DNA of 64,000 bases from Mytilus californianus (Eukaryota): assembly GCF_021869535.1 (NCBI RefSeq), contig NW_026262648.1, positions 1,364,001-1,428,000 of the forward strand, given 5' to 3'. Positions 19,124 through 63,639 of this stretch are shown piece after piece; position 1 is the stretch's first letter, and each line of letters opens with the position of its first letter. Position numbers and translations under genes: made by a program. The notes beneath the pieces are model-generated. The model saw nothing but the letters and a program-made list of their open reading frames with translations, made no database searches and was not told the origin of the DNA.

Positions 19124-19830
19124 TTTTTTATGCCCCCGCCGTAGCGGTGGGGGCATTAAGTTTTACCCTTGTCCGTCTGTACATACGTACGTACGTACGT
19201 ACGTCCGTACGTCCCAAAATTGGTTTCCGTTCTCTAACTTGAGTTTGCCTCAACCAAATGTTATGAAACTTATACACAATGCTTATTACCACAAAACACA
19301 GATCAAGTTTGAATTTTGGTGGCGTCACTTTAACTGTTCTAGAGTTATGCCCCTTTATAAATTGAAAAATTGCAAAATTTTTAGTTTCCGTTCTCTAACT
19401 TAAGTTTGCCTCAACCAAATGTTATGAAACTTATACACAAGGCTTATAACCACAAAACACAGATCAAGTTTGAATTTTGGTGGCGTCACTTTAACCGTTC
19501 TAGAGTTATGCCCTTTATAAATTGAAAAATTGCAAAATTTTTAGTTTCCGTCCTCTAACTTAAGTTTGCCTCAACCAAATATTATGAAACTTATATACAA
19601 TGCTTATTATCACAAAACACAGATTAAGTTTGAATTTTGGTGGCGTCACTTAAACCGTTTTAGAGTTATGCCCCTTTATAAATGGAAAAATTGCAAAATT
19701 TTTAGTTTCTGTTCTCTAACTTAAGTTTGCCTCAACCAAATGTTATGAAACTTATACACAATGCTTAATACCACAAAACACAGATCAAGTTTGAATCTCG
19801 GTGGGGTCACTTTAACCGTTCTAGAGTTAT
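19124..19830 (+). mobile_element. HINE-like element with ~3.8 tandem 161-bp core repeats, 3'-truncated
   Basis: 5' hairpin ATGCCCCC..GGGGGCAT and an (ACGT)n microsatellite. Unit starts GTTTCCGTTCTCTAACT at 19223, 19384, 19544 and 19705. Confidence 0.75.
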
Positions 19831-39543: not shown

Positions 39544-42500
39544 ATGGTCAAGCGCAAACGAGAAGACAGAGACACGGATTTGAAAGATGCAAGCCAATGT
39601 CACCCCAAAATGGCATCACTTATTGGTGAGTTCACATATAATTTCTTTGATTATGTAAAACTGTCAAATTTGTGCATTCTTGCAGAAGATCGCCAATCGG
39701 TGGTTTTCTCCGATTAAATTGACCGCCATGGTATAGTTGAGGATTCTGAAAGTGGCGTTAAACACCAACAACCAATCAATCAAATATGTAGATACGTTAG
39801 TACATACTCATGTGACGGAATTTTCTTGCATACTTAATATTGATTTTTAACGTCTCGAAGACAATTTCTTCACTTTCCAATTTGTATAAAATACTTTGAA
39901 TAATAAAACAATTATCATGAACATTCAGATAAGTTTTTTGAGAATTTCCGAATAAAGATCACCATTTAGGATTCCTAGATTTTACATGGTGATTCAAAAT
40001 GAATTCGACGAAGAAAAAGTTCATAGAGATAAGTAAATTAATTGTTTCAAAGGCTCCAATTTTAATTGTATAGATAATCGACACCCTTTATTATGATAAC
40101 CGAATGAATCAGTCATATTAAAAAAAAATCGCCTTTTCAGAAAATGTTTTTAAAACATCAGTATTTAGTAGTATACCAAAATAATCTTTAAATTTCTACA
40201 ATTAATAAAGATGATTCTATAAGTAAATTAATTCACAAATAAATAGTTTCTGGTTAAACCAATTTACGTATATATTTTCATTTGCTGTTCAGACCGATTT
40301 TCGACAAAAAAAGTCAAATCCTCTTTTTTATTCTTGTACAGCAAAGACATTTTTTAAACCATGACGGGAATTTTCTTGAGCTTATATAATGATGGTTTTT
40401 CTTTTCTATAAAAGCAATGTTTTACATTTTTATGAATAACGTTTTAAAGACTGTTTAATTGTTTTTAAGTATGTATACCTTAGATATACTTAAACTGAGA
40501 TAGTCTTTCACGTAGGCTTTCGACGATTTTGACTGTCCTTCGATTTTGTGATTTTCTTATATATATCTTTGGACAGAGCTCATCTATTTGAACCCCGGGC
40601 ATATGTAATATCATTTTTTGCTCCCGGAAATGTAAAAAATAACTCACCATGTTTCAGGGATTATATACTAGTATATTTGTAAATCACATGAATGTGAGTA
40701 ATGTCTTTTTAAATGAATTGACTATGTGAAAGGTTATTATCAAACATGGTTATAAGATATTTAAAACTCTGCCAGATTGATAATGTATAATTTTTTAAAA
40801 GCGATTATTTGGTTCGGAAAGTTTTAAAGTGAATGTTCAAAAGCAACAAAGAATTCAAATTTGCAAATTTAGGTAATCGGATATTAAAATACTGGTTGAT
40901 GGATAAAAGAACCACAAGAACACCACTATTGGGCATAGAAAATTGCAGGTTACGCATTTCACTATCTGTTTAATGTGCAATACTCCAGAAAATAAAATAA
41001 TTCGTAAAAAATTATACTAAAACATCATTTTACAAATTCGAAATGAAAGCTGGTGGTAGTGATTATTGTTATTTTGTAATATACTTAAATCAGTTGTCAA
41101 TCAAGGGATGAATCCAGTTAAGTTGACCCGAAGTCACGCCCCCTCTTTAGCCGACATTTTGTCTCGCTTGCAACTACAGTAGGAAAAGTGAGACAAAACG
41201 ATTCTAGTTTCAGCTATCGGCGTCGTTTTGTCATCGGCGTCTCAACATTAAGGTTTATTTTTTGGACTTGTTCACACATCAATAACTTTGTCTTTATTGA
41301 AATTTTCGATACTTGGACAGAAAATTATAGTCGGATGTTAGAGCTTTCTTAAGTCATGTTTATTGTTGATTTTACATATTGTGGACTCTAAGTATAATTT
41401 ACTTCTTACTAACTATATATATACAACTTCATCATGATCAGTAGACAGCCTCTCAAGAACGAATATTAAACATACATTGTATCTTCATTTTCCTTACTTT
41501 ACTGACAAATGTAATCAACCCTTTTCAAGCCCTTTTTAAAAACTTCTCAAAAACTTTTTACTTATCAATAGACTCTGATCTTAATTGACTAATATTGCCA
41601 TTTTTCTGTCGATAGACGGCGAATCTCTCCGGGCATTCCGACCTCTTCTATCAATCTAAACTCTCTGCCACGATATAGCCAAAAGTACTAAAAGTTGCGT
41701 TGAAAACCAACAACCAATCAATCAATTTATAACATCCACATACAGTTGATGTTATTGCAAAAGATTTGTATTTTACAATTGCTGTCAGACATTTATACTT
41801 CATTCTTACCGGAAGTCATATAACTGTCAAAATTAAATTAAAAGTAAATATTTATGTGTGGCTATGTTTTTTTTTAAAGGTATGACATCAAGACTAACAA
41901 CGCCCTCTGTTTTATCAGCAGCGGAAACGGAACTACGAACAGTTATGGACGATTTTGTAACGGTATATGAAAGATTGGACCAAGAAGACAAAGCGGATAA
42001 GAAACCAAATTACTCTTATACTGAAATGATATACCTTTCGATTCTTCGATCACCAAACTTTTGTTTACCGATAACAGAAATATATAAATATATAAAAAAT
42101 AGATTTTCGTACTTCCGGAGTTCTGCTCGGAAACATTGGTGTAATGCTGTCCGCCATAGTCTTTCAAAAACAAAATGTTTCACAAAGATTGCCATTGGTA
42201 GGGGATCAAGTGGCAACCATAATCTCAACCGATCAACTTATTTATGGTGCATAGTTCCAGGAAGCATAGTTAATTTTGCAAGAGGAGACTATCGTCCAAA
42301 CGTAGATACAGAAAGTGGGACAAACACCCTTCGATGGGGATATTTCCGTGTAAATGCGGGACAATTTTGGGATCAGGTAGCTGTGTATTTAGAGAAGAAA
42401 ATGGAAATTTTTCAGCAAATGATACTTGCAACTCAGTCACCTGGAAAAGTGTTGGAGGCACAAGCTTGTTTTATCCCAGGTTTAGCATCGACTGTTCACA

Positions 42501-43441
42501 TTATGAATTCATCACAGACCAACACACCAACAATTGTTACTAACCAAGAATCAGCGGATAATCCCTTTGTTACAAAACAAGATATACCAACACGTACTGT
42601 TCATTATGGACCGAATTTATCTGATAGTGGAATTTTAGACCAAAGCCTACCAAAAGTGCCGAGACGGATAGGTAATAACAGTAGAGACAGTGGAAATGAA
42701 AGCTTTTCTGACTCAAGCCCAGAGGAAAAACGACAGAAACAAAATAGTTTGCCAAACAAAGGATGTGGATTGAATGCTTCGTATTTAACAGTCAATTCAT
42801 CGATACTCGACGATACACGGAAAACTCCAGAGCTTCCCGATTTGGGACATGTCAGTCCTTTATCGATTTCACCGTCATTATCGCCGATAACAGGAAATGT
42901 AACTTATAACAATGAGACATTTGCAGGATCTTCATTTTCATCCACATTTCCATCGATTCCAGCATCGTTTGCGTCGACACCAGTTGTCACTTCGTTTTCA
43001 CAGCAGCGTTTTTCTCAAGCTCAATCTGTGTACACACACTCATTTTCACCACCACTGTTTCCTTCATTATCGCCGCCAACATTTCAAGTTTCAATGGAGA
43101 GTCCTACTTGCTATCCACAGTTTGCCCAAACAAATTCTAAACCACTGACATTGCCCTATTTACAATCATCAATGAATAGCCCAATGAACACTCAACATAA
43201 TATGTTTTTACCACGTGCTTATTCGCAACCGCCATTGTATATTCCACATCAAGTACCAGCCGGAAGCTACGATTTTGGACAATTTCCGGTACCTCCTATA
43301 TCTCATACACCATATCAGTATGATTCGTACGGATGTCAATCATCTGAAAATCAGATAAACTATTTGCAGTTGTCCTCACAGAATAAGTTCGAGCAGTGTT
43401 CTGGGCAAACATTAGCTTCAGTTAATTGGAATGCAACTTGA
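39544..43441 (+). CDS. Divergent forkhead-box (Fox) transcription factor, 2 coding exons, 547 aa
   Basis: join(39544-39625,41880-43441). The ATG is in a GCCATGG context, the phase-1 junction is GTGAGT..TTTAAAG, and the total is 1644 nt. Forkhead domain: KPNYSYTEMIYLSILRS..IYKYIKNRFSYF..WCNAVRHSLSKTKCFTK..YLW. N-terminal KRKR and an S/P/Q-rich C-terminus. Subfamily not assignable by eye. Confidence 0.88.
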
Positions 43442-44954: not shown

Positions 44955-45622
44955 AACCGCGGGGAAATCCAATGCTCCGTTAAGTCAGAAGTTCCTGCTC
45001 CAATAATGATACCCTACAAAAACCCATGGGAAAATCAAATGCTCCGTTAGGTCAGCAGTTCCTGCTCCAATAGTGATACCCGACAAAAACTGTGGGAAGG
45101 GGGGATCCAATGCTCCGTTAAGTCAGAAGTTCCTGCTCCAATAGTGATAACCTACAAAAACCCATGGGGAAATCAAATGCTCCGTTAGGTCAGCAGTTCC
45201 TGCTCCAATAGTGATACCCTACAAAAAAACCATGGGGAAATCCAATGCTCCGTTAAGTCGAAAGTTCCTGCTCCAATAGTGATACCATACAAAAACCCAT
45301 GGGGAAATCCAATGCTCCCTTAAGTAAGATGTTCCTGCTTCAATAGTGATACCCTACAAAGCCCGTGGGGAAATCCAACGCTCCGTTAAGTCAGAAGTTC
45401 CAGCTCCAATAGTGATACCCTACAAAACCCATGGGGAAATTCAATGCTCCCTTAAGTCAGAAGTTCCTGCTCCAATAGTGATACCCTACAAAACCCATGG
45501 GGAAATCCAATGCTTGGTTAAGTCAGAAATTCGTGCTCCAATAGTGATACCCTACAAAACCCATGGGGAAATCCAATGCTCCGTTAAGTCAGAAGTTCCT
45601 GCTCCAATAGTGATACCCTACT
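44955..45622 (+). repeat. 66-bp minisatellite, ~10 copies
   Basis: GTGATACC recurs at 45412, 45478, 45544 and 45610 (period 66). Earlier copies carry small indels. Confidence 0.9.
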
Positions 45623-48329: not shown

Positions 48330-51300
48330 TTATCTATCAGCTCCTGGAATGTTAATGGAATGTTTAAAAGAATATGTGGTAACAGAGTTTGTTAACTAGA
48401 TGATAATATTATTTGTCAAATTATGACTGCAGATATTGTTTGTTTTTCAGAAACACATATCCCCTCCAAAGAGATTTTAAACTATGATGGTTATAAATGA
48501 TTTGTAAACTGTAGGTCGTCTGATTCAAATAAGGTTAGAGGTGGTTTAGCTACTTTTTTTAAGAAGGAAATATTATCAGGTGTAAAGTTGATGGATAAAT
48601 CCATAGATAATATAATGTGGTTCAAACTAGACAAGAATTTTTTCAGTTTTGATAGAAATGTATATTTATGTTTCCTATATATTCCCCCTTCCAACTCATC
48701 TTACACGTTAAGAACAAATTTTGACAAACAAATTTTTGACAAACTTGAAACTGATATCGCTAAATATAGTATATCAGGGGACGTTATCCTCATGGGAGAT
48801 CTAAATGCACATATTAACTGTAAAGAGTTAGATTTCATAACAAATGAAGTAGATGACAGTTTAGACAACTTTCTTCCCACTAATTATGTCGCAGATAGTG
48901 TATGCAAATTTAGAAATACTCAAGTACACCAAAAAACTAATAACTATGGAAAACTTATACTTGACTTATGCACAGAATCTCAATTAAGAATCCTTAACGA
49001 AAGAACACTTGGTGATTCGAAAGGTAAAATCACTTTCTATAATCATAATGGTGTGTCTATTGATGACTATTGCTTATGCTCATCTGAATTTTTACCAAAT
49101 ATTGTCAATTTTAGTGTAGGTCAATATGAACCAACAATCTCTGATCACTGTCCAATTTCAATAACAATACTATCTCAAATAGTAAAGGAGCCATTGAATA
49201 ATCATGTAAAGCCTACTCTTAGAAGAGTTAAATGGACTATTAAACGAGAAGAAATTTTTAAGTCTAATTAAACTTTAAAACTATTAACTCTGAATTAGAT
49301 AATTTAACCCAAAAAAATGGATGCAAATAATGCACTTGATTCCACTTTAGCTCAAAGTGTAAATGACACAGTCTCAAAATAAAGTCATAAGGAAAAAATA
49401 TAGACAATTTAGACATAAAATGATAACACAGATTATAGATTCAAATAATAGCTGTTCAGATGATTTTTGGAAAACTATTACAAAACTAAAAAAAGGAGAA
49501 CTTCAAGGATCCTAGCTCTAACATACAACCTAAAGAATGGTTTGAATATTTTAATAAATTAATGAATATTGATTATGATAAAAATGCACTTAACGATCAG
49601 AAAATTTATACTGATTTTAATGATTGTAATACTGAGATTTTAAACAGTTATATTACAACTGAGGAGGTGGTTGTTGCAGCTAAATCTTTAAAGAATAATA
49701 AAGCAAGTGGTTCTGATTGTATTACAAATGAAATGTTGCAAATATCTCGTAATATGAATATTGATGTTTATGTAAAATTGTTTAATCTTATTCTTAAGTC
49801 TGGTATTTACCCAACTTTTATTAAGCCCATTTTTAAGGGTTGGTGTTTTAATGATCCATCTAATTATCGAAGTATAGCCCTTTCAAGTTGATTAGGAAAA
49901 TTCTTTCTTAAAGTTTTATATAATAGATTAGAAAAATATCTTGAAGGAAATACAATTATTTGTCGTGAGCAAATTGGATTTAGAAAGGGAAGTCGAACAA
50001 GTGATCATGTTTTGACTCTTAAAAGTATTATTGATAAGGCATTTAAATCATCAAAAAAGATATATGCTTGTTTTATAGATTTCAGGAAGGCATTTGATAC
50101 TATTAACAGGGAGGCTCTCTTTTAAAAATTGTCTTGTTACAACACAGATGGCCTCTTCTTCTGTATATTAATGAGAGATATGTATAAAGAGGTTTTGTAC
50201 TCCGTGAAGATCTCTGAAGGTGTCACTGATTTTTTTAATTCCACAGTTGGGGTAAAACAAGGGTGTATTTTAAGTCCCACATTATTTTCTTTATATATTA
50301 ATGATTTACCCCCTATTTTTGACTCCACATGTGATCCGCCCAAGTTAGATGATAATGATATTTTATGTTTGTTATATGCTGATGATTTAGTTCTTATTTC
50401 TGAATTTGCTAATGGCCTACAAAAATGCCTTGATAAGCTAAGTTTATATTGCACTAGTTGGGATTTAACAGTAAATCTTGACAAAACCTAAATTATGATT
50501 TTTAACAAATAAACTTCTTTGTAAAAAAGCCTCAAAAGCTATATTTTGTATCAGAAAACTGTTATTTTCTGAAGATATTAATGTTTTATCTCACCTCAAG
50601 CTTTTTGATGCTTGTGTTAAACCTATACTTCTGTATTGTAGTGAAGTTTGGTCTCTTTATATGATTAAAGATATTACAAATCTAGATTCAAAATATAAGT
50701 CATTGGCTACCAATAAAATTCAGATTAAATTTGCAAAAACTTTAATTGGAGTAAATAAAACAGCTGTTAATTTAGCAGTACTAGCTGAACTTGGTATGTA
50801 TCCAGTTTTTATATAAGCATTAAAACTGTCAATTGGCTTCTGGTTGCATGTGATACAATCTGGTGATAATTGCTTACTTAAAGATGTATATAGTTCAAAC
50901 CTGCAATTAACCAATGGATTTGCGAAAAAGATTGAACAGCTACTTGCTACATTAAATTTTTCAAATGTTTGGAAAAATCATGATACTATTTCAAAAAGGC
51001 GTTTATTATATGCACTTCATACCAAATTTAATGATAGATACCTGAATTATTGGAAAGAAAATATTTTTTGTGATGATAAAAATCATTGCACGGTAATAAG
51101 CTCAGAACATATAGTCAGCTTAAAGAAAATTACAAATTGGAAACCTATTTATTGTTAAATATTGACAGAAAAGTAATAGAACATTTTGGCAAAATTCGCA
51201 TAAGTAATAGTGTTCTTAAAATTGAACAAGGACGACACACTAAAACACCTGTAGAAGAAAGAATTTGTCCCTTGTGTCTTTTAGAAGTAGAAGATGAATT

Positions 51301-52593
51301 TCATTTCACTATAATATGTAAACTAGAGGCTCTCACGAGCCTGTGTCGCTCACCTGTATTTACTGATGCTTTTGAAATCATGTAAAATAAGGTTAAAATC
51401 ATAATTAACAGTATTGGATATTAGATATTATAATGATATCTAAGATAATAACAAAAAACTGCAAAATTTTTGTAAAATTACTAACTCAGGGGCAGCAACC
51501 CAACAACGGGTTGTCGGATTCGTCTGAAAATTTCAGGGCAGATACATCTAAATCTGATGAACATTTTTGCTACCTGTCAGATTTGCTCTAAATGCTTTAG
51601 TTTCAGGGATATAAACCAAAAACTGCATTTTACCCCTATGTTCTATTTTTAACCAAGTCAGCCATGATGGTTGGAATGCGGGGTCATCGGACAAATTTTT
51701 TAAACTAGATACCCTAATAATGATTATAGCCAAGTATGGTTAAATTTGTCTCAGTAGTTTCAGAGAAGAAGATTTTTGTAAAAGATTACAAAAATTTACC
51801 AAAAATTGTTAAAAATTGACTATTAAGGGCAATAACTCCTAAAGGGGTCGACTGACAATTTTGGTCATGACAACTTATTTGTAGATCTTACTTTGCTGAA
51901 CATTATTGCTGTTTACAGTTTATCTCTATCTATAATAATATTCAAGATAATAACCAAAAACGGCAAAATTTCCTTAAAATTACCAACTCAGGGGCAGCAA
52001 CCCAACAACGGATTGTCAGATTTGTCTGAATATTTCAGGGCAGATAGATCTTGACCTGATAATCAGTTTTACCCTATGTCAGATTTACTCTAAATGCTTT
52101 GGTTTCAGAGATATAAGCCAAAATCTACATTTTACCCCTATGTTCTATTTTTAGCCACGGCGGCCATCTTGGTTGGTTGGCTGGGTCATCGGACACATTT
52201 TTTAAACTAGATACTTGAATGATGATTGTGTTTAAGTTTGGGTGCATTTGGCCCAGTAGTTTCAGAGGAGAAGATTTTTGTAAAAGTTTACGGACGACGG
52301 ACGACGGACGACGGACGCAGGACGACGGACGACGGACGCAGGACGACGGACGACGGACGCAAAGTGATGAGAAAAGCTCACTTGACCTTTCAGGTCAGGT
52401 GAGCTAAAAACTAAATACAATTAGAGAACAATTATTTTCCAAAATTAGTGAAATAGTTCCCTCTTTTTTAAATATGACTAATGAAGCAAGATTTAAATTT
52501 TTGTATACCTGTGGTGAGACTGATATAATTAAAACTATTGTAAAATTAATAAGCACCATGTATAATTCTAGAAATGCTTTATTGAGTACTTAA
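48330..52593 (+). mobile_element. Decayed non-LTR retrotransposon (APE + RT ORF2; RTE-X/CR1-like)
   Basis: APE: ISSWNVNG (48336), ETH, MGDLNA, IDDYCL, SDHCP. RT: GVKQGCILSPTLFSLYINDL, LLYADDLVL. C-terminal KIEQGRH..ERICPLC..EDEFHF..C. The reading frame resumes after the 51321-52410 insertion and ends at TAA 52591-52593. Multiple stops and frameshifts. Confidence 0.88.
51321..52410 (+). mobile_element. HINE/Helentron-like element inserted in the LINE
   Basis: Sub-TIR GCTCACCTG (51348) / CAGGTGAGC (52396), 3' hairpin at 52376-52404, a (GACG)n microsatellite at ~52284-52340, and a ~500-bp internal duplication. Inserted in an A-run with no clear TSD. Confidence 0.78.
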
Positions 52594-55500
52594 TAAATTT
52601 GTGTAAGATTTTTTAACCTATTTTGAAGGATAGTTTCATTAACAGTGATATTTTAAGGAAATGTTGATCAAAGTATTTAAAATTCCCACAATATATGCAT
52701 GACGATAATTACACATGCGTATGTACATACAGGATATTGCACAACAAAGCCAGTACAGTTTAAATAGTTAAATTTTCCTATTAGATATCGGGTGAGCCGT
52801 AGCGTAGTGGATAAATGACTTCTTACTTCTGAGCCAAAAGCAGCTAGTTCTATCCTTGTCTGTTGAGTCTCGGCTCGGCAGCAGGGATACCACTTCGCCA
52901 ACTCGACACTCACTCTTTTTATTTTATTGTATCAAATGTATTTTTCTTTTAGCTTAGTTTGTGTGGATAATTTTGGAAATGCATAGGAAATGAACATTTT
53001 AATTCTTGTTTCTCCTATCGGAATAAAGGTTGTGCGTGTTTCATTGAAATGTTTACTTAGTATATGGATCCTTCTGTTATAGAAGTGAAAATACCTATAG
53101 ATACTATCTTTCTATATAGTGAAAAGAAAGAGCACGACGACAAAAAATAAAGTGTCCTCCGTACAAATTTTGTTTTTTATCACATTTTTTGCAGAAATTA
53201 ATTCTTTTTTCTCAGTTCGTGTATGTTTTATATTTCGGATTATTTTTTATCATGATCTTCGGTCTTAGTGTTGCATTATACATCATCATAAATGGAATAA
53301 AGAATAAAGATACCCCTTTTTCACAGGATGGAGCTGATACAAGGCGTGCAAAAGCATACGAAAAACTCGGCGACTCGGCATTAATTCTTTTTAGTCTTGT
53401 CGTGTATCAATATTGTTGTTGTTGTTAACAAATGCCTTTCCCTGCTCTGCAGAGAAAAATATAAATAATACGTCATTTCTCATATACTCTTCATCGTACG
53501 TGTACTCATGTGTTAAACAAAATCATTGATCATGATGTATAAATAGCCTCAATTTATAATCCTTATGTTTACATTCTTTAATAGACGAACGGTTGACACG
53601 TTGGACTTGCAATAGAGGGGATATGGGATCGAATCTTATACCCCTCAGTTAGATTTTTATCAAGAATTTTTAACCTATTTTGAATGATAGTTTCATTAAC
53701 AGTGATATTAAAATTCCCACAATATATGCATGACGATATTTACACATGCGTATGTACATACAGGATATTGTACAAAAAAGCCAGTACAGTTTAAACAGTT
53801 AAATTTTCCAATTAGATATCGGGTGAGCCGTAGCGTAGTGGATAAATGACTACTTACTACTGAGCCAAAAGCAGCTAGTTCTATCCTTGTCTGTTGAGTC
53901 TCGGCTCGGCAGCAGGGATACCACTTCGCCAACTCGACACTCACTCTTTTTATTTTATTATATCAAATGTATTTTTCTTTTAGCTTAGTTTGTGAGGATA
54001 ATTTTGGAAATGCATAGGAAATGAACCTTTTAATTCTTGTTTCCCCTATCGGAATAAAGGTTGTGCGTGTTTCATTGAAATGTTTACTTAGTATATGGAT
54101 CCTTCTGTTATAGAAGTGAAAATACCTATAGATACTATGTTTCTATATAGTGAAAAGGAAGAGCACGACGACAAAAAATAAAGTGTCCTCCGTACAAATT
54201 TTTTTTTATCACATTTTTTGGCAGAAAATAATGCTTTTTTCTCAGATCGTGTATATGTTTTATATTTCGGATTATTTTTTATCATGATCTTTAGTCTAAG
54301 TGTTGCATTATACCTCATCATATATTGGATAAAGAACAAAGATACCCCTTTTTCACAGGATGGAGCTGATACAAGACGTGCAAAAGCATACGAAAAACTC
54401 GACGACTCGGCATTAATTCTTTTTAGTCTTGTCGTGTATCAATATTGCTGTTGTTGTTAACAAATACCTTTCCCTGCTCTGCAGAGAAAAATATAAATAA
54501 TACGTCATTTCTCATATACTCTTCATCGTACGTGTACTCATGTGTTAAACAAAATCATTGATCATGATGTATAAATAGCCTCAATTTATAATCTTTATCT
54601 TAACATTCTTTAATAGACGAGCGGTTAACACGTTGGACTTGCAATAGAGGGTATGTGGGATCGAATTTTATACTCCCTCAGACTGAGTTAGATTTTTATC
54701 AAGAATTTTTAACCTATTTTGAATGATAGTTTCATTAATAGTGATATTTTAAGGAAATGTTGATCAAAGTATTTAAAATTCCCACAATATATGCATGACG
54801 ATAATTACACATGCGTATGTACATACAGGATATTGCACAACAAAGCCAGTACAGTTTAAATAGTTAAATTTTCCTATTAGATATCGGGTGAGCCGTAGCG
54901 TAGTGGATAAATGACTTCTTACTACTGAGCCAAAAGCAGCTAGTTCTATCCTTGTCTGTTGAGTCTCGGCTCGGCAGCAGGGAAACCACTTCGCCAACTC
55001 GACACTCACTATTTTTATTTTACTGTATCAAATGTATTTTTCTTTAAGCTTAGTTTGTGTGGATAACTTTGGAAATGCATAGGAAATGAACCTTTTAATT
55101 CTTGTTTCCTCTATCGGAATAAAGGTTGTGCGTGTTTCATTGAAATGTTTACTTAGTATATGGATCCTTCTGTTATAGAAGTGAAAATACCTATAGATAC
55201 TATCTTTCTATATAGTGAAAAGGAAGAGCACGACGACAAAAAATAAAGTGTCCTCCGTACAAATTTTTTTATCACATTTTTTGGCAGAAATTAATGCTTT
55301 TTTCTCAGTTCGTGTATGTTTTAAATTTCGGATTATTTTTTATCATGATCTTTAGTCTTAGTGTTGCATTATACATCATCATATATGGGATAAAGAATAA
55401 ATATACCCCTTTTTCACAGGATGGAGCTGATACAAGACGTGCAAAAGCATACGAAAAACTCGGCGACTCGGCATTAATTCTTTTTAGTCTTGTCGTGTAT

Positions 55501-55938
55501 CAATATTGCTGTTGTTGTTAACAAATATCTTTCCCTGCTCTGCAGAGAAAAATATAAATAATACGTCATTTCTCATATACTCTTCATCGTACGTGTACTC
55601 ATGTGTTAAACAAAATCATTGATTATGATGTATAAATAGCCTCAATTTAAAATCTTTATGTTTACATTCTTTAATAGACGAGCGGTTAACACGTTAGACT
55701 TGCAATAGAAGGGCCGTGGGATCGAATCTTATACTCCTCAGATAGATTTTTATCAAGAATTTTTAACCTTTTTTGAATGAAAGTTTCATTAACAGTGATA
55801 TTTTAAGGAAATGTTGATCAAAGTATTTAAAATTCCCACAATATATGCATGACGATAATTACACATGCGTATGTACATACAGGATATTGCAAAACGAAGT
55901 CAGTACAGTTTAAATAGTTAAATTTTCCTATTAGATAT

Positions 55939-56403
55939 GGTTACAAGAGCGCAATTATTTGTTTACATTCAACCGGCAAAATTTTTACCCCAAGATGGTA
56001 CTCAGAATAAAAAATTTTGAGGCTCCTGATTGGATGATGCAGGTTGGAATTATTTTTTATTTGAAAGCTTATTAATTTAGGTTTGAAAATAGGTGGAAAT
56101 TAAATTCATAATTCACAATGTGTAGAAGATATAATTTTTGTTATTAACTGAGGAGCCATTCAAAATTAACCTTAAGTTTCCAATTTAGTGCGGAATTTGG
56201 AAGCTTCCATAACAACTGCATTTTAGGGCACTTTTTGCCGCATGACGATATACTTATTTTTGGCTGTAATAAAAGGCTGACATCTATAGTCACAGGAGCT
56301 GCTACCCATTTTTATCTAGTTTGTTTATTCTTCAAAAAAAGATTTTTGAATACCACTGGGGTCCTATGGAAAATGCATTACAAATAATTGCGCTCTTGTA
56401 ACC
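55939..56403 (+). repeat. Left LTDR (465 bp)
   Basis: Self-inverted 24-bp ends, followed by TATA. Highly similar to 61087-61536 apart from a ~10-bp and a ~5-bp indel and scattered substitutions. Confidence 0.92.
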
Positions 56404-56413
56404 TATACTGAAA

Positions 56414-56880
56414 ATGGACTTTTACTTTCACTTTCAAAAAACTAAGTATTTTTGGAACTTTTTAAAACACACGAGTGATTTGGATCAATACTCTGTCACA
56501 ATGGATGCCTTTTGGGACAATATTGGACTCAAATTTTTTAAGAAAACTGAAGTTATGGGGAATGGGAAGGGATGTGTTGAATGGGTCGGAGCAAAAAAGG
56601 GAAAATCTTGTTATGGCATACAGGTTGGGAAATGGCCAGGGGGTGAGGAAAAAGGGAGGCTGCACATAGACTGGCATACATGATTAAGCATAGATTGACA
56701 AGATATGATATGCCACAAATAGATGAGAACAACAATAAAGTAGAATGTAGCCATATTTGTGACCAAACTCTCTGTGTCAATCCTGAACACATAACTATTG
56801 AACCTCATGCTATAAATCAAGACTGTAAAAATAAGGGACATTGCTCTAAAAGTCACAAGCCATATTGTTTAATATGTAAT
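56414..56880 (+). pseudogene. His-Cys box (His-Me finger, I-PpoI-like) homing endonuclease, frameshifted
   Basis: Frame 1 reads ..GCVEWVGAKKGKSCYG..KWPGGEEK. After a 1-nt shift near 56655 it reads AAHRLAYMIKH..VECSHICDQTLCVNPEHITIEPHAINQDCKNKGHCSKSHKPYC, matching the SHLCH..C.NP.HL..E....N motif and the second Cys/His zinc cluster. Confidence 0.85.
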
Positions 56881-56895
56881 TTAATAAATAAATAT

Positions 56896-59800
56896 TTATT
56901 TTTTAACAGATCTTTTTCTCTTTCGGTCATTTCTGCTGTATGAATGGTCACTTTGTTTCTGCGGAGTAGATTTCAGTCCTTGATCACATTTTAGCAACAT
57001 ATTTTTTTCATATTCTATTATTTCACTTAGTTTTTCATACAGTTTGTACAGTTAAGCCCTTTTATCACTTCTAAATTGCTTGTATTGCATAGTCTTTTTG
57101 TGCTGTTTTTGCAAAATGTCAACTTTTTGTATTTCTTTTAGAGCCTTGTATGCAGAGCCTCCCACTGGGACTTCACAATGAAGAGCAGTACAAAGTTCTA
57201 GAACTGATTCTCCTGGACCAAAATTAACACTGTGAGCAGCTGAATGAGCACGAACGGTAACATTTCTTTTAAAAGTAACATTTGACGGTAAAGAACGCCT
57301 CAGGCTACGGTTAAATCCCTCAACACAATTAGTGTTCATATTAAGTCTGGTCTTGTCAAGTGTATTTGGGCCAAGACGCAGGTTGACTGTCTTTCTTATG
57401 AAGTCTATATTTTGCTGTGAGTGTGCAATTTTGAATGTTTTTGGTAGTAGTGACCTTCCTGTAAGCCATACTTTCTGTAATCCATTACATAAAAATGAAT
57501 GTTTTTTACACGACGAATGATTTCCAGTGTAACAGTTGACAATTGCATCAACGACATGCGATATTTTACATTTGATTTTTTTAAAGTTTCCACTGTACAT
57601 TTTCCTTGTCTGAGCCAGCTCGGCATTACACCTTTCTGTCAAATCCACTGAAAAATAATTCAGTAGTTTTTGTCTCTTCACTTGTGTTCTTGCTGGCATA
57701 ATCTGTAACAGGTTCTTATCATTCTTCGTACGCTTACGGATATTCTCAGACACATGCCGTGTATCAAGGAAATGTTCAGGCTGAGTACTTATTGTGCCTT
57801 CTTCATACAAATCTTGTGCAGCCCTGTATGCAGAGCAGTCGGTCGGGATCAGTAACCAGGTGCTCAACCTCAATGTTGTCTGCCTTAAGATCAAGGATAC
57901 ACTCTTTGGCCCATGTATATTCATCCCCTATACTTTTGACCATTGGAATGTTGGCACTACATTCATCTGTACACTGTGCATGTAAACGGCCTGTGTCAGG
58001 ATCCACCTCAAGGCTTGAATGTTTTAAACAATGCTTATTTTTGTCGAGCCTTCGACTTTTATCGAAAAAGCGAGACATAGCGATCCTACATTCCGTCGGC
58101 GTCGGCGTCGTCGTCGGCGGCGTCCACAAATATTCACTCTGTGGTTAAAGTTTTTGAAATTGCAATAACTTTCTTAAACTATCCTGGATTTCTACCAAAC
58201 TTGGACAGAAGCTTGTTTATGATCATAAGATAGTATCCAGAAGTAAATTTTGTAAAAAAAAAATCATTTTTTCCGTATTTTACTTATAAATGGACTTAGT
58301 TTTTCTGCCAGTTAACATTACATTCACTCTGTGGTTAAAGTGTTTAAAATTTTAACAACTTTCTTAAACTATCCTGGATTTGTACCAAACTTGGACAGAA
58401 GCTTGTTTATGATCATAAGATAGTATCTAGAAGGAAAATTTGTTAAAATTTTGTTCCATTTTTTCCGTTTTTTACTTATAAATGGACTTTGTTTTTCTTC
58501 CAGTTAACATTACATTCACTCTGTGGTTAAAGTTTGTAAAATTTTAACAACTTTCTTAAACTATCCTGGATTTGTACCAAACTTGGACAGAAGCTTGTTT
58601 ATGATCATAAGATAGTATCCAGAAGTAAAATTTGTAAAAAAAATCCAGTTTATCCGTATTTTACTTATAAATGGACTTAGTTTTTCTGCCAGTTTACATT
58701 ACATTCACTCTGTGGTTAAAGTTTTTTTTAAATTTTAACAACTTTCTTAAACTATCCTGGATTTGTACCAAACTTGGACAGAAGCTTGTTTATGATTAAA
58801 AGCTAGTATCTAGAAGGAAAATTTGTTAAAATTTTGTTCCATTTTATCGTTTTTTACTTATAAGCGGACTTTGTTTTTCTTCCAGTTTACATTACATACA
58901 GTCTGCAGTTTAAGTTTTTAAAACATGTATTAGATTAAATAAACTATCCTGGATTTTTACCAAACTTGGACAGAAGCTACTTACAATCAAAAGATAGTAT
59001 AGAGAGGAATATTTTTATTAATTGTTTTCCTATTTTTGTTGAGCCTGCGATTAACAGCAAAAGTAGGCGAGACACTGGGTTCCGCGGAACCCTTACGATT
59101 TTTTTATATTTACGTTAGTATATTATGGTCTGTTGTTATATTTTCAGCTGTGGTATAGACAGTTTGTGTTACAGGCTGAAATGGAGTGCGTCCAACACCG
59201 GAATACAGCGGATTGTTATACATTCCGTCCATCTGCAAACTGATTGTGTTTGGATCTTCCTTCCCTCTGAGGCTATTGATTTCAATAATTTCATTTTTTC
59301 TTTTTCTCAGGTCCATTTTATTCACATCTACGATGTTTTTAAGGACTTTATTTGCTCTTCTTTGTAGACTGGATGCTGCTGGTGCCTGCATATTACCACT
59401 TAGAATGATTTTGCGCATACTGGAGGAAGCTATTGGTGTCTGACTCAGGCCAACATGTACAGCTGTATCTAGTTTTGATGGTTTTCTGCCTGGCTTTCCT
59501 GTTTCTAATTCTTCGTTTAAGCTTTACATATCCGATATATAACTGCAACTTGTACAAATCGAAATCTGGCGAGAAGAGAATCCTCTTTTCTCCTCTTTCT
59601 CTAGATCGCATGATAGTTTACCCTCACAGGCTGGACGTTTTTGCTGGTGCTCCCTAAAGGCCTTGTTCCACATTTCTTCCATCTTGTAAACACACACCGT
59701 ACTATAAGAATTGAAGTCAGGCCTGGAAAAACACAAAAAAATTGCACATTTACACCTGTAATCAAGAATATTTTCAACAAATAATTTTTCTGAATTAGAG

Positions 59801-60381
59801 TTACCTGCCCTTTGCTTGGGTATGAATTTTTTTAAACTGACTGTTGGACATTTTGACATAGTTTTATAGGGCTAATTATCTCTATTTCATTTAAACAAAA
59901 CATAAAATTACTTAATTTTAGAAGGAAAAGACAGAGTAAATTCCAGTTTAATATATTTTTAGTGTAAGAAATGTGAAATTTTATGAATTTTCAGTATATT
60001 TTAGCAGTTTTAGACCTACTTTGTACTGTGATATTACTTAATTGTTCATCTGTAACTGTTTTCTCTATTTAAAAATTAGATTATATATTTTTTCCTTACC
60101 TTTTGTCATTTACAGCAGGATTCCTGTTGGTTTTTTTTTGGAACAGAGACCTCATCAGACTTTGGTCGCAGTAGTTTGGCCGCACGAGCAGACCGCCTGC
60201 CTTTTTCCTCTGGATCAGTGTATGGATCATTTACTACTAAATTGTACTTTTTCATGGTAAGTCTTGTATATTTAGGTGTGTCATAGTCACTTTTCACTGG
60301 CAATAGTTTAGTCCTATTTTTGGTATGAGGTATACTTCCAGCCTTAAATTTAAAGATATTTCTTTTTTTGAACCCAGACAT
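56896..60381 (-). pseudogene. Kolobok-type DDE transposase, disrupted
   Basis: Pieces 60381-60106, 59722-59110 and 58037-56896 join into one protein: C..C.Y.S..GRKP..GLSQT, MDGMYNN (D1), VTDPD (D2), NTNCVEGFNRSLRRSLP (E), ending DHSYSR..KRKRSVKK*. Lesions: stops at 59524 and 57052, frameshifts near 59110 and 57840, and a 1-kb HINE insertion. Probable introns near 60099-59870 and 59804-59723. Confidence 0.85.
58040..59100 (+). mobile_element. Helitron/Helentron-like non-autonomous element with ~4.5 tandem 190-bp units, nested in the transposase
   Basis: Inserted in a T-run. It has a (CGT/CGG)n microsatellite near the left end, units CATTCACTCTGTGGTTAAAG at ~58131, 58321, 58513 and 58702, and a perfect 16-bp terminal palindrome GGGTTCCGCGGAACCC at 59077-59092. 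Confidence 0.82.
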
Positions 60382-61086
60382 ATTGGAATTGTACAGTTTT
60401 CACTTTAATTATTTAGTGTTTGTAAAGCTTTTATATACCCTTGTAAAGTAGGACAGTATTTTATCTTTTTTCAATAAAAGTTGAATGGAAAGTTCATTCA
60501 GTAATTAAAAATATTTGAGATTGAGCACATGCCTCCCTCAAAATTTGACAAATTCTCTACACAGGCCATATGATAAACTTTGGATTTTTTTATTACCAAT
60601 ATGAAAACAACCACTTTTAATTGCTATCATTCCTATATCTCTTATCTTCAGTAATAAAAACATAAATGATAAAGATCCAGAGTGCATCTTCAGTACACTT
60701 TATTTTCAAAAATATATGACAAAAAGTCCAAAATTTGGCTAATTTTGACAATTTTAAGAAAAGTAAGGGTAGAATCCACCCTGAATGAACATTTGATTCA
60801 ACTTGTACATGCATAAAGAGAAATGTTAATTTTATAAACAAAAACACTAAACAAATGAACTTTTAATGTTATTTAATGGTATTTTTTTTATTTTCATGAC
60901 AGCATTCTTGAAATCTGTAGATGAAATTCCTCTGTGGCCGCAAGGCACGGGTTGCTCCTTCATATGGTAGTTTCTCATAAGTAATTCTACCAATTTCTTT
61001 CAAACTTGGTATTTCTTCCTAATATAAGTTCTGTGTTTAACAGATACATTTTTGTCCTGATTCGAGTCAATTTTATTCTTTCTATA

Positions 61087-61536
61087 GGTTACAACAGCGC
61101 AATTATTTGTTTACATTCAACCGGCAAAATTTTTACCCCAAGATGGTACTCAGAATAAAAAACTTTGAGGCTCCTGATTGGATGATGCAGGTTTTTGTTT
61201 GAAAGCTTATCCATTTAGGTTTGAAAATAGGTGGAAATTAAATTCATAATTCACAATGTGTAGAAGATATAATTTTTTTATTAACTGAGGAGCCATTCAA
61301 AATTAACCTTTCCAATTTAGTGCGGAATTTGGAAGCTTCCATAACAACAGCATTTTAGGGCACTTTTTGCCGCATGACCATCTACTTTTTTTTTGCTGTA
61401 ATAAAAGGCTGACATCTATAGTCACAGGAACTGCTACCCATTTTTATCTAGTTTGTTTATTCTTCAAAAAAAAAATTTTTGAATACCACTGGGGTCCTAT
61501 GGAAAATGCATTACAAATAATTGCGCTCTTGTAACC
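61087..61536 (+). repeat. Right LTDR (450 bp)
   Basis: Preceded by TATA (61083-61086) and followed by the ATAT TSD. Confidence 0.92.
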
Positions 61537-62316
61537 ATATCGGGTGAGCCGTAGCGTAGTGGATAAATGACTACTTACTACTGAGCCAAAAGCAGCTAGT
61601 TCTATCCTTGTCTGTTGAGTATCGGCTCGGAAGTAGAGATACCACTTCGCCAACTCGACATTCACTCTTTTCATTTTATTGTATCAAATGTATTTTTCTT
61701 TTAGCTTAGTTTGTGTGGATAATTTTGGAAATGCATAGGAAATGAACCTTTTAATTATTGTTTCCCCTTTCGGAATAAAGGTTGTGCGTGTTTCATTAAA
61801 ATGTTTACTTAGTATATGGATCCTTCTGTTATAGAAGTGAAAATACCTATAGATACTATCTTTCTATATAGTGAAAAGGAAGAGCACGACGAAAAAAAAA
61901 TAAAGTGTCCTCTGTACAAATTTTTGTTTTATCACATTTTTTTGCAGAAATTAATTCTTTTTTCTCAGTTCGTGTATGTTTTATATTTCGGATTATTTTT
62001 TTATCATGACCTTAAGTCTTAATGTTGCATTATACATCATCATAAATGGGATAAAGAATAAAGATACCCCTTTTTCACAGGATGGAGCTGATACAAGACG
62101 TGCAAAAGCATACGAAAAACTCGACGACTCGGCATTACTTCTTTTTAGTCTTGTCGTGGTGTATCAATATTGCTGTTGTTGTTAACAAATACCTTTCCCT
62201 GCTCTGCAGAGAAAAATATAAATAATACGTCATTTTTCATATACTCTTCATCGTACGTGTACTCATGTGTTTAACAAAATCATTGATCATGATGTATAAA
62301 TAGCCTCAATTTATAA

Positions 62317-62436
62317 ACACAAACTAAGCTAAAAAAAACAACATTTGATATAATAAAATAAAAAGAGTGAGTGTCGAGTTGGCGAAGTGGTATCCCTGTT
62401 GCCGAGCCGAGACTCAACAGACAAGGATAGAACTAG
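62317..62436 (-). repeat. 120-bp inverted fragment of the array unit
   Basis: Reverse complement of CTAGTTCTATCC..CTTAGTTTGTGT, joined directly to the truncated unit 4 and to the satellite. Confidence 0.85.
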
Positions 62437-63639
62437 GGGTAAGCATTCTTAAAGGCCGAAAATTTCGCTCGAAACATAAAAATAAAGCCAAATTCGATAA
62501 AATACGCGTTGGGGACACCCTTTTTCCGACCCATTGTCTCGGTTGTTCTTTATGGCTAGGGATTATAGACGCTGCCCTAATGAATAGCTATTGGATAGTA
62601 CTACAACGTGAGGACAAAGAATTTCTTGGGTAAGCATTCTGAAAGGCCGAAAATTTCGTCCGTAACACGGAAAAAAGTAAAATTTGATAAAATACGCATT
62701 GGGCACTTTCCAACCTATTGCCTTGGCAGTTCTGTATGGCTAGGGATTATAGACTCTGCTCTAATAAATAGCTATTGGATAGTACTACAGCGGGAGGGTA
62801 AAGAATTTCTGGGGTAAGCATTCTTAAAGGCCGAAAATTTCGCTCGAAACATAGAAATAAAGCCAAATTCGATAAAATACGCGTTGGGGACACCCTTTTT
62901 CCGACTCATTGTCTCGGTTGTTCTTTATGGCTAGGGATTATAGACGCTGCCCTAATGAATAGCTATTGGATAGTACTATAACGTGAGGATAAAGAATTTC
63001 TGGGGTAAGCATTCTGAAAGGCTCAAAACTTCGTCTGTAAGACGGAAAAAAGTCAAATTTGATAAAATACGCATTAGGCACTTTCCAACCTATTGCCTCG
63101 GCAGTTCTGTATGGCTAGGGATTATAGACTCTGCTCTAATAAATAGCTATTGGATAGTACTAGAGCGGGAGGGTAAAGAATTTCTGGGGTAAGCATTCTT
63201 AAAGGCCGAAAATTTCGCTCGAAACATAGAAATAAAGCCAAATTCGATAAAATACGCGTTGGGGACACCTTTTTTCCGACCCATTGTCTCGGTTGTTCTT
63301 TATGGCTAGGGATTATAGACACTGCCCTAATGAATAGCTATTGGATAGTACTACAACGTGAGGATAAAGAATGTCTGGGGTAAGCATTCTGAAAGGCCGA
63401 AAATTTCGTCCGTAACACGGAAAAAAGTCAAATTTGATAAAATACGCATTGGGCACTTTCCAACCTATTGCCTCGGCAGTTCTGTATGGCTAGGGATTAT
63501 AGACTCTGATCTAATAAATAGCTATTGGATAGTACTACAGCGGGAGGGTAAAGAATTTCTGGGGTAAGCATTCTTAAAGGCCAAAAATTTCGCTCGAAAC
63601 ATAGAAATAAAGCCAAATTCGATAAAATACGCGTTGGGG
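62436..63639 (+). repeat. Higher-order satellite: alternating 191-bp (A) and 184-bp (B) monomers, 375-bp dimer x3.2
   Basis: Monomer starts (G/T)GGGTAAGCATTC at 62436, 62627, 62811, 63002, 63186, 63377 and 63561. A-A and B-B copies are much more alike than A-B. Confidence 0.92.

What the first reader, a model, noticed from the sequence alone, without database searches (positions are those of the whole stretch)
55939..61536. Composite-like eukaryotic DNA transposon carrying a homing endonuclease and a DDE transposase between long direct repeats
Seen: two ~450-bp direct repeats, each a self-contained mini-transposon with 24-bp inverted ends. They flank a His-Cys-box nuclease gene (+) and a DDE transposase gene (-), with a 4-bp ATAT target duplication confirmed by unoccupied sites in neighbouring array units (52785, 53816, 54881). 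Knowledge: this layout resembles bacterial composite transposons and LTR elements and matches the KolobokP lineage (Kojima and Bao, Mobile DNA 2022, recalled from memory). It may therefore be a new family rather than a new class. The 24-bp TIR is longer than I recall being reported. Inference: the nuclease may drive homing-like tandem multimerisation or LTDR recombination.
Basis: partly seen in the sequence, partly recalled or inferred. Interest (0 to 1): 0.9.

Follow-up and report, generated by a model that had tools for sequence, protein, structure and literature searches.

The report
Decayed KolobokP transposon in a mussel genome
This is a dead copy of a KolobokP DNA transposon, a composite-like mobile element of marine invertebrates described in 2022, sitting in a Mytilus mussel genome; it is a tidy textbook example of that lineage and not a new kind of element.

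Summary
Two direct repeats (465 and 450 bp, 2.9% diverged) each end in 24-bp inverted repeats. They flank a 4.68-kb interior, and the whole unit is bracketed by a 4-bp ATAT duplication. Three neighbouring array units show the unoccupied site.

The interior encodes an I-PpoI-like His-Cys-box nuclease (+) and a convergent DDE transposase (-).

The host is a Mytilus species. Copies of the same family (91-95% nt) occur in M. coruscus, including a complete 4,542-bp LTDR-INT-LTDR copy with its own TTAT duplication. That rules out two independent MITEs.

Among the paper's 228 consensus families only KolobokP-1_PeVi (Perna viridis; 24-bp TIR, 4,530 bp) shares the TIR core. The window's family seems uncatalogued there. 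The 24-bp TIR is not unusual, because Table S1 lists TIRs up to 25 bp.

The copy is dead. The transposase has four in-frame stops, a frameshift and a 1.06-kb nested insertion. The nuclease has a 1-nt frameshift.

Verdict: new member of a known kind, low interest.

The parts
55935..55938 (.). Target-site duplication ATAT (one side)
   Evidence: a single ATAT is present at the empty sites 52785-52788, 53816-53819 and 54881-54884.
55939..56403 (-). LTDR, 465 bp (the 3' LTDR in the transposase-sense orientation). Its 24-bp TIRs lie at 55939-55962 and 56380-56403, and its termini are GG...CC.
56404..61086 (-). Internal region (INT), 4,683 bp. It begins and ends with TATA, as do KolobokP-1_PeVi, KolobokP-1_MeMe, L001, L002 and L006.
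56501..56943 (+). His-Cys-box / His-Me finger nuclease gene. It is broken by a 1-nt frameshift in the A-run 56649-56653. The catalytic block ECSHIC..C.NPEH..IEPHAIN is retained.
   Evidence: PF05551 at E=1.7e-7. tblastn with the L001 nuclease shows two frames. The family profile hits I-PpoI. The fold of the intact M. coruscus orthologue best matches I-PpoI.
56929..59721 (-). DDE transposase, main exon (Met at 59673), now a pseudogene. In-frame stops lie at 59524-59526, 59110-59112, 59104-59106 and 57052-57054. A frameshift lies at about 57842-57855, just after the TDPD motif. The gene is interrupted by a nested insertion. Its 3' end overlaps the nuclease 3' end.
   Evidence: 56-75% identity to the 570-aa P0001. 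The motifs D(QMDGMYNN), D(TDPD), DTRH and E(VEGFN) are present.
58043..59097 (-). Nested, unrelated non-autonomous insertion (1,055 bp) inside the transposase ORF. It is flanked by AAAAAT at 58037-58042 and 59098-59103. Its core is 4.7 copies of a ~190-bp tandem repeat (58132-59037).
   Evidence: The site is empty in the M. coruscus copies L006 and L004.
60106..60381 (-). Putative upstream exon 1 of the transposase (91-aa ORF; KY.RL...LLRP motif). This is an inference, not a demonstration.
   Evidence: It is weakly similar to the N-terminal extension of longer homologues (E=0.41). It is 68% nt conserved with L001, where a 92-aa gene is called at the same place.
61087..61536 (-). LTDR, 450 bp (the 5' LTDR in the transposase-sense orientation). 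Its TIRs lie at 61087-61110 (1 mismatch) and 61513-61536.
61537..61540 (.). Target-site duplication ATAT (other side)
52605..62440 (+). Host context: four tandem units of about 1.03-1.06 kb. The fourth unit (55755-55938 plus 61537-~62400) carries the insertion.

Best explanation
The region is a monomeric (LTDR-INT-LTDR) copy of a KolobokP-lineage Kolobok DNA transposon in a Mytilus genome. It lies on the minus strand in its own (transposase-sense) orientation.

Shown:
- The unit as a whole is bracketed by one 4-bp target duplication at a site that is empty in three paralogous array units.
- The same LTDR-INT-LTDR unit sits at a different locus, with a different 4-bp duplication, in M. coruscus.
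- The INT encodes a Kolobok-type DDE transposase and a convergent, 3'-overlapping I-PpoI-like nuclease.

Inferred:
- The DDE transposase recognised the outermost TIRs of the two LTDRs and inserted the whole composite into ATAT, with staggered 4-nt cuts giving the duplication.
- The nuclease does not choose the target. Following Kojima & Bao, it may cut within an LTDR or at abutted TIRs and so promote unequal crossover, multimerisation or circle re-integration.

After insertion the copy decayed. The LTDRs have diverged by 2.9%. The transposase carries four stops, one frameshift and a 1.06-kb nested insertion. The nuclease carries a 1-nt frameshift. The copy is therefore non-autonomous at best and probably immobile unless another copy supplies the proteins.
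For: - Architecture, TIRs, TSD and empty sites.
- Protein domains.
- Transposase homology and lesions.
- Nuclease. The top four PDB fold matches are all I-PpoI (E about 1e-3, probability 1.00), and I-HmuI is at rank 6, mirroring the paper's HHpred result.
- Definition of KolobokP and Table S1.
- Terminal homology: 37 nt of the KolobokP-1_PeVi terminus match both LTDRs exactly, allowing a 1-nt gap.
- Same family in M. coruscus: 91-95% nt identity. L006 is a complete 4,542-bp copy with a TTAT TSD and a TATA...TATA INT.
- Size: without the nested insert and one copy of its flanking AAAAAT, the window copy is 4,537 bp, against 4,530 bp for KolobokP-1_PeVi.
- LTDR relatedness: LTDRs within a copy are closer to each other (2.0-2.9%) than to LTDRs of the other copy (3.3-4.8%).
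- A more distant intact element, L002, has the same layout, with LTDRs 100% identical over the 300 nt compared.
- Host: the forkhead ORF is 94% identical to a M. edulis protein.
Against: - No labelled phylogeny against other Kolobok lineages was run. Pfam calls the transposase only 'Mutator-like' (PF20700).
- Repbase and Dfam could not be searched.
- No solo LTDR or multimer of this family was seen, but only 64 kb plus three M. coruscus loci were available.
- The route to this site cannot be told from the sequence. It could be whole-unit transposition, or a solo-LTDR insertion followed by integration of an LTDR-INT circle.
- Any nuclease role is untested.
Confidence: 0.93

Rival explanations
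1. Two independent insertions of a ~450-bp MITE happen to flank unrelated DNA that carries a transposase and a nuclease gene.
For: Each LTDR is a self-contained unit with perfect 24-bp TIRs. The paper argues that solo LTDRs can move on their own.
Against: - Neither LTDR has its own matching duplication. One is flanked by ATAT/TATA and the other by TATA/ATAT, while the outer flanks match (ATAT/ATAT) and the empty site holds a single ATAT.
- The paralogous array units contain no INT-like sequence.
- The same LTDR-INT-LTDR unit occurs at another locus in M. coruscus with its own TTAT TSD.
Confidence: 0.02
2. The copy arose in two steps. A solo LTDR first inserted at ATAT. A circular LTDR-INT unit then recombined into it (model b1 of Kojima & Bao), so the unit was never transposed whole.
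For: This route leaves the same TSD and the same final structure. The paper considers it plausible.
Against: Nothing here favours it over one-step transposition. The LTDRs of a copy are each other's closest relatives, which fits either route.
Confidence: 0.12
3. It is an LTR retrotransposon, or a MULE (Mutator-like) element, and not a Kolobok.
For: It has long terminal direct repeats and a short TSD, which is LTR-like. The Pfam label for the transposase is 'Mutator-like transposase'.
Against: - No reverse transcriptase, integrase or protease domain appears in any ORF.
- The repeats end GG...CC with 24-bp TIRs, not TG...CA.
- The TSD is 4 bp, not the 8-11 bp typical of MULEs (general knowledge).
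- The terminal sequence is homologous to a published KolobokP consensus.
Confidence: 0.02

Closest known systems
KolobokP-1_PeVi (Perna viridis), Kojima & Bao 2022, Mob DNA 13:24 (PMC9587614)
   Same: - 24-bp TIR and 4-bp TSD; LTDR of 461 bp against 465/450 bp here.
- Total length 4,530 bp against 4,537 bp here once the nested insert is removed.
- The INT starts and ends with TATA.
- The first ~40 nt of the LTDR are nearly identical, and about 75 nt at the other end are roughly 80% alike by eye.
- It is the only one of the 228 published consensus families that shares the TIR core ACAAGAGCGCAA.
   Different: - The host genus differs (Perna versus Mytilus).
- The TIR differs at positions 3 and 24, and the LTDR interior and the nuclease-coding DNA are clearly diverged (about 65-75% by eye).
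- No full alignment was made, because the consensus exists only as supplement text.
Uncatalogued copies of the same family in Mytilus coruscus (GCA_011752425.2; loci L004-L006)
   Same: They are 91-95% nt identical over the LTDRs and INT, with identical TIRs and a TATA...TATA INT. L006 is a complete 4,542-bp monomer with a TTAT TSD.
   Different: They sit at different loci and carry different lesions and different nested insertions. They lack the window's 1.06-kb insertion. L004 keeps an intact 142-aa nuclease ORF.
I-PpoI, the His-Cys-box homing endonuclease of a Physarum group I intron
   Same: Pfam PF05551 is matched. The SH.C...C.N..H...E....N catalytic and zinc block is conserved. I-PpoI is the best PDB match by both sequence profile and predicted fold.
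   Different: The nuclease is carried by a DNA transposon, not a group I intron. Identity is only about 17-18%. The cleavage site is unknown, and the window copy is frameshifted.
Bacterial composite transposons (for example Tn10-like or IS26 pseudo-composites) and LTR retrotransposons
   Same: Two long terminal repeats, each a potential mobile unit, bracket a central segment. The whole unit is flanked by one TSD.
   Different: The flanking repeats are non-coding and direct. The transposase sits in the centre, not in the flanking elements. There is no reverse transcription machinery. The resemblance is one of layout only.

Membership tests
KolobokP (Kolobok superfamily) | LTDR-INT-LTDR architecture with LTDRs of about 450 bp or about 660 bp | tested here: met
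   The LTDRs are 465 and 450 bp and 97.1% identical over aligned positions.
KolobokP (Kolobok superfamily) | Each LTDR carries its own short terminal inverted repeats, and the termini are 5'-RR...YY-3' | tested here: met
   24-bp TIRs, with termini GG...CC. This is within the 1-25 bp range of Table S1.
KolobokP (Kolobok superfamily) | A TSD of 3-5 bp flanking the whole unit | tested here: met
   ATAT, with three empty paralogous sites. The M. coruscus copy L006 has TTAT.
KolobokP (Kolobok superfamily) | The INT encodes a Kolobok-type DDD/E transposase (DDE triad, C/DxxH motif, Cys/His clusters) | tested here: met
   D (QMDGMYNN), D (TDPD), DTRH, RC...CY.GNH..C...S..C and E (VEGFN) all align with 12 homologues. 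The gene is a pseudogene.
KolobokP (Kolobok superfamily) | [quoted passage not shown] | tested here: met
   Convergent genes with overlapping 3' ends; PF05551 is matched. The same layout is seen in L001, L002 and L003.
KolobokP (Kolobok superfamily) | The transposase falls in the KolobokP clade in a phylogeny with labelled Kolobok lineages | not tested
   No labelled Repbase proteins were usable. The paper's alignments are held only as gapped PDF text. The indirect support is nucleotide homology of the LTDR termini to KolobokP-1_PeVi.
KolobokP (Kolobok superfamily) | The family also occurs as solo LTDRs and (LTDR-INT)n-LTDR multimers | not testable with these tools
   There are no further copies in the window, and the source genome cannot be searched by DNA. 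L005 is an LTDR-INT form lacking the second LTDR, but its INT end is truncated too.
His-Cys-box homing endonucleases (I-PpoI group of His-Me finger nucleases) | Conserved His-Me catalytic residues and zinc-binding Cys/His residues | tested here: met
   PF05551 scores 32 bits against a cut-off of 27. The profile aligns SH.C..C.N..H..E...N with I-PpoI residues 90-134. H, C, C, H and N are invariant across 11 sequences.
His-Cys-box homing endonucleases (I-PpoI group of His-Me finger nucleases) | I-PpoI-like fold | tested here: met
   The AF2 model of the intact same-family ORF from M. coruscus has pLDDT 80. The top four Foldseek PDB hits are I-PpoI (E 1e-3 to 3e-3, TM 0.40-0.48). This was tested on the orthologue, not on the window's frameshifted copy.
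His-Cys-box homing endonucleases (I-PpoI group of His-Me finger nucleases) | Site-specific cleavage that drives homing of its own gene | not testable with these tools
   This needs biochemistry. The target is unknown.
Bacterial-type composite transposon | The flanking repeats are autonomous IS elements that encode the transposase | tested here: not met
   The LTDRs carry no transposase-like ORF, and the transposase lies in the INT.
LTR retrotransposon | RT/RNase H/integrase coding capacity and TG...CA LTR ends | tested here: not met
   No such Pfam domains were found. The ends are GG...CC with 24-bp TIRs.

The most novel reading that the evidence does not exclude
The window's family, together with KolobokP-1_PeVi, would define an uncatalogued mytilid subgroup of KolobokP with unusually long, perfect 24-bp TIRs and about 40 nt of strongly conserved termini across genera. 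On a circular or excised intermediate, the abutted TIRs plus a 4-nt spacer would form a perfect ~52-bp palindrome. That is the kind of semi-palindromic site an I-PpoI-like dimer cuts, so this family could be a clean substrate for testing whether the nuclease targets TIR-TIR junctions.
Probability: 0.1. Interest if true: 0.5.

Novelty: new member of a known kind. Interest (0 to 1): 0.17.

Why it matters
The finding matters little beyond annotation. It adds one more family, apparently missing from the 2022 catalogue, to a lineage already known to be abundant in bivalves. This particular copy is dead.

Its modest value is as an unusually clean illustration. The empty sites lie in cis in a tandem array, the TIRs are perfect, and a sister-species copy has an independent TSD.

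It also points to M. coruscus copies, one with an intact nuclease ORF, that could be used to test the published but untested 'nuclease-induced unequal crossover' model.

Tried and rejected
- **Published consensus files.** I searched the paper's consensus supplement for the TIR, LTDR and INT words of this element, in both orientations and with 'tt'-free words to avoid PDF rendering quirks. Only KolobokP-1_PeVi matched, and only at its termini. I also read the Mytilus/Modiolus LTDR consensus sequences directly. None starts with GGTTACAAG. KolobokP-5_MyEd shares only a subterminal AATGCA.TTTTCCATAGGA motif.
- **Peptide searches of the supplement.** These found nothing and are uninformative, because the alignments are gapped.
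- **tRNA and Rfam scans.** The insertion abuts a tRNA-like-looking GTAGCGTAGTGG box, so I scanned around the site. Nothing was found, and I dropped the idea of a tRNA/SINE-targeted insertion.
- **Other copies in the window.** There are none, neither LTDR nor INT.
- **Nested insertion as a Helitron/Helentron derivative.** The terminal palindromes fold no better than shuffles, so it is left unclassified.
- **Word-indexed search with a nuclease.** It gave only 7 hits, too few for a deep alignment. The structure was therefore predicted from 11 sequences.
- **Other checks.** No locus fetched looked human. The window has no N runs.


Full report
**1. Observation**

A repeat search over 50-64 kb recovers the two long direct repeats in several gap-separated blocks. 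It also recovers four 24-nt inverted-repeat arms, one at each end of each repeat. Aligned with gaps, the repeats are 55939-56403 (465 bp) and 61087-61536 (450 bp). They differ by 13 substitutions over 449 aligned positions (2.9%, K2P 0.0295) and four indel runs of 10, 1, 5 and 1 bp.

The word GGTTACAAGAGCGCAATTATTTGT occurs four times in the 64-kb window, allowing up to 3 mismatches. All four are at those ends, against none in 100 shuffles.

The junctions read TTAGATAT|GGTTAC... and ...GTAACC|ATATCGGG. The element sits in the fourth unit of a tandem array of about 1.03-1.06 kb. The other three units read TTAGATATCGGG at 52785, 53816 and 54881. The 4-bp ATAT duplication and the unoccupied sites are therefore real.

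**2. Coding content**

*Nuclease.* On the + strand, two adjacent ORFs (56414-56683 and 56680-56943) together encode a small nuclease. The second ORF matches Pfam PF05551 (zinc-binding loop region of homing endonuclease) at 32 bits, above the cut-off of 27. Comparison with the nuclease of a related element (L001) shows a single reading frame broken by a 1-nt loss in the A-run 56649-56653. The likely start is the Met at 56501.

*Transposase.* On the - strand, ORF fragments match PF20700 'Mutator-like transposase'. An exhaustive HMMER search with the 290-aa C-terminal ORF found 763 relatives. The best is a 570-aa protein at 63% identity (P0001). Mapping P0001 back onto the window gives the following picture:
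- The gene runs from the Met at 59673 (homology extends up to 59721) to about 56929.
- In-frame stops lie at 59524, 59110, 59104 and 57052.
- A frameshift lies at about 57850, directly after the TDPD motif.
- A foreign segment splits the gene between residues ~188 and ~191.

An X-joined reading aligned with 12 homologues keeps the catalytic D (QMDGMYNN), D (TDPD) and E (VEGFN). It also keeps the DxxH motif (DTRH) and the Cys/His clusters.

The two genes are convergent and their 3' ends overlap, as in the related loci L001, L002 and L003.

A 91-aa ORF at 60106-60381 is probably an upstream transposase exon. It resembles the N-terminal extension of longer homologues (KY.RL...LLRP; E=0.41, which is weak). 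It is also one of the few upstream segments conserved with L001.

**3. The nested insertion**

The segment 58043-59097 (1,055 bp) is absent from the M. coruscus copies L006 and L004. There the sequence reads ...ATATAAAAAATAAGC... and encodes an uninterrupted INIKNKLC. In the window the segment is flanked by AAAAAT on both sides. Its core is 4.7 copies of a ~190-bp tandem repeat.

It has no TIRs. Its terminal palindromes are not better than chance. It is an unclassified non-autonomous element. It is reminiscent of the satellite-carrying Helentron derivatives described in oysters (PMC7492417, seen), but that link is not tested.

**4. What it is**

Kojima & Bao (Mob DNA 2022; PMC9587614) define KolobokP as follows:
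- LTDR-INT-LTDR architecture, with LTDRs of about 450 or about 660 bp that carry their own short TIRs.
- Termini 5'-RR...YY-3'.
- TSDs of 3-5 bp.

All of these are met here. In addition, the INT begins and ends with TATA. The paper reports the same for KolobokP-1_MeMe. I found it also in KolobokP-1_PeVi, L001, L002 and L006.

The LTDR consensus of KolobokP-1_PeVi (Perna viridis) starts ggatacaagagcgcaattatttgaatgcattttccatagg. A 37-nt probe from it, allowing one 1-nt gap, matches both window LTDRs exactly. Its other terminus is about 80% alike by eye. Table S1 gives that family a 24-bp TIR, a 4-bp TSD, a 461-bp LTDR and a length of 4,530 bp. The window element is 4,537 bp once the nested insert and one copy of its flanking AAAAAT are removed.

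The 24-bp TIR is therefore not exceptional. Table S1 lists TIRs up to 25 bp.

**5. Nuclease family**

A profile of five KolobokP nucleases hits only I-PpoI chains in the PDB (E=0.0045). The match covers exactly the catalytic SHLCHN.C.N..HL..E....N block.

The same-family, intact 142-aa ORF from M. coruscus (L004) was modelled with mean pLDDT 80. Its four best PDB fold matches are all I-PpoI (E 1e-3 to 3e-3, probability 1.00, TM 0.40-0.48). I-HmuI is at rank 6. This reproduces the paper's HHpred result.

**6. Host and other copies**

A single-exon forkhead ORF at 41858-43441 is 94% identical to a Mytilus edulis protein, and the next hits are at or below 71%. The window therefore comes from a Mytilus species.

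The closest transposase fragments in the 90%-clustered protein database are three M. coruscus 'unnamed protein products' at 78-86% identity. Their loci in assembly GCA_011752425.2 carry the same family at 91-95% nucleotide identity:
- L006 3458-7999 is a complete 4,542-bp LTDR-INT-LTDR copy at a different locus. It has identical TIRs and a TATA...TATA INT. It has its own 4-bp duplication, TTAT; the last base of the right TIR is mutated.
- L004 is a copy split by three other insertions.
- L005 lacks its second LTDR and carries a different TE at the same A-rich spot of the transposase ORF.
- All three are degenerate.

LTDRs within a copy (2.0-2.9% apart) are closer to each other than to the LTDRs of the other copy (3.3-4.8%). 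This is expected if each composite inserted as a unit.

A more distant element, L002 (GCA_033119305.1), is apparently intact. It has a 581-aa transposase, a 139-aa nuclease and LTDRs identical over the 300 nt compared.

**7. Rivals**

- *Two independent MITEs around unrelated DNA.* This fails. Neither LTDR has its own matching flanks (ATAT/TATA and TATA/ATAT), while the outer flanks match and the empty site has one ATAT. The whole unit also recurs elsewhere with another TSD.
- *LTR retrotransposon or MULE.* These readings fail on coding content, termini and TSD length.
- *Route to the site.* The sequence cannot decide this. It could be one-step transposition of the composite, or a solo-LTDR insertion followed by integration of an LTDR-INT circle (model b1 of the paper).

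**8. Mechanism**

Shown: the unit was inserted as a whole, with a 4-bp duplication, into a non-conserved AT-rich site.

Inferred from the family: the DDE transposase acts on the outer TIRs. The nuclease does not select the target. It may instead cut LTDR DNA or abutted TIRs and so stimulate unequal crossover or circle integration. In this copy neither protein can be made.

**9. Novelty**

The architecture, the proteins and the proposed dual mechanism are all published.

The specific family appears absent from the paper's 228 consensus sequences, even though M. coruscus, M. edulis and M. galloprovincialis were surveyed. Only KolobokP-1_PeVi shares the TIR core. Current Repbase and Dfam could not be consulted.

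I therefore rate it a new member of a known kind, of low interest.

No locus fetched looked human. The window has no N runs. No step needed referral.

Noticed in passing
window 58043-59097: A 1,055-bp non-autonomous element with a core of 4.7 copies of a ~190-bp tandem repeat is nested in the transposase ORF. It is flanked by AAAAAT on both sides, has no TIRs, and has short palindromes near both ends. It may be a satellite-carrying Helentron-type derivative, as described in oysters, but it is unclassified.
   Followed up: partly
L005:4465-5902 (M. coruscus): A different ~1.4-kb TE, with ends CTAGAGGC...GCTCACCTG / CCAGGTGAGC, is inserted within a few bases of the same A-rich spot of the transposase ORF as the window's nested insertion. 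These are two independent hits in different copies.
   Followed up: partly
window 52605-55938 and 61537-62440: The host DNA is a 4-unit tandem array of about 1.03-1.06-kb units, 90-98% alike. Each unit holds a GTAGCGTAGTGG...AGTTCTATCC box that looks tRNA/SINE-like, but ARAGORN and Rfam call nothing. A 106-nt segment of the unit recurs inverted at 62331-62436.
   Followed up: partly
window 62436-63639: A satellite-like array with a 184/375-bp period (about 6.4 or 3.2 copies, 82-96% matches) lies directly downstream of the host array.
   Followed up: no
window 52276-52373: An (ACGG/ACG)n microsatellite lies just upstream of the first array unit. A similar GC-rich GACGCCGCCGACGACGACGCC run sits at the edge of the nested insertion (58090-58125).
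   Followed up: no
window 41858-43441: A single-exon 527-aa forkhead-domain ORF (PF00250) is 94% identical to a Mytilus edulis protein. It was used only to place the window in Mytilus.
   Followed up: partly
window 48588-49271; 4299-4820: There is an ORF with an endonuclease-reverse-transcriptase-type endonuclease domain, likely a non-LTR retrotransposon fragment. There is also a 173-aa ORF with DUF4772/Tudor-like matches.
   Followed up: no
window 19223-19830; 34445-35364; 44961-45621: Further tandem arrays are present: a 161-bp unit x3.8, a 28-bp unit x32 and a 66-bp unit x9.9.
   Followed up: no
model m27b29d51435b (L004:9971-10396, same-family nuclease): After I-PpoI, the next-best PDB fold matches are the DNA-binding domains of Nuclear Factor I proteins (NFIA/B/C/X; probability up to 0.72), ahead of or around I-HmuI.
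   Followed up: no
L004:9968-10396 (M. coruscus): An intact 142-aa nuclease ORF of the same family survives in a copy whose transposase is split by two large nested insertions.
   Followed up: partly
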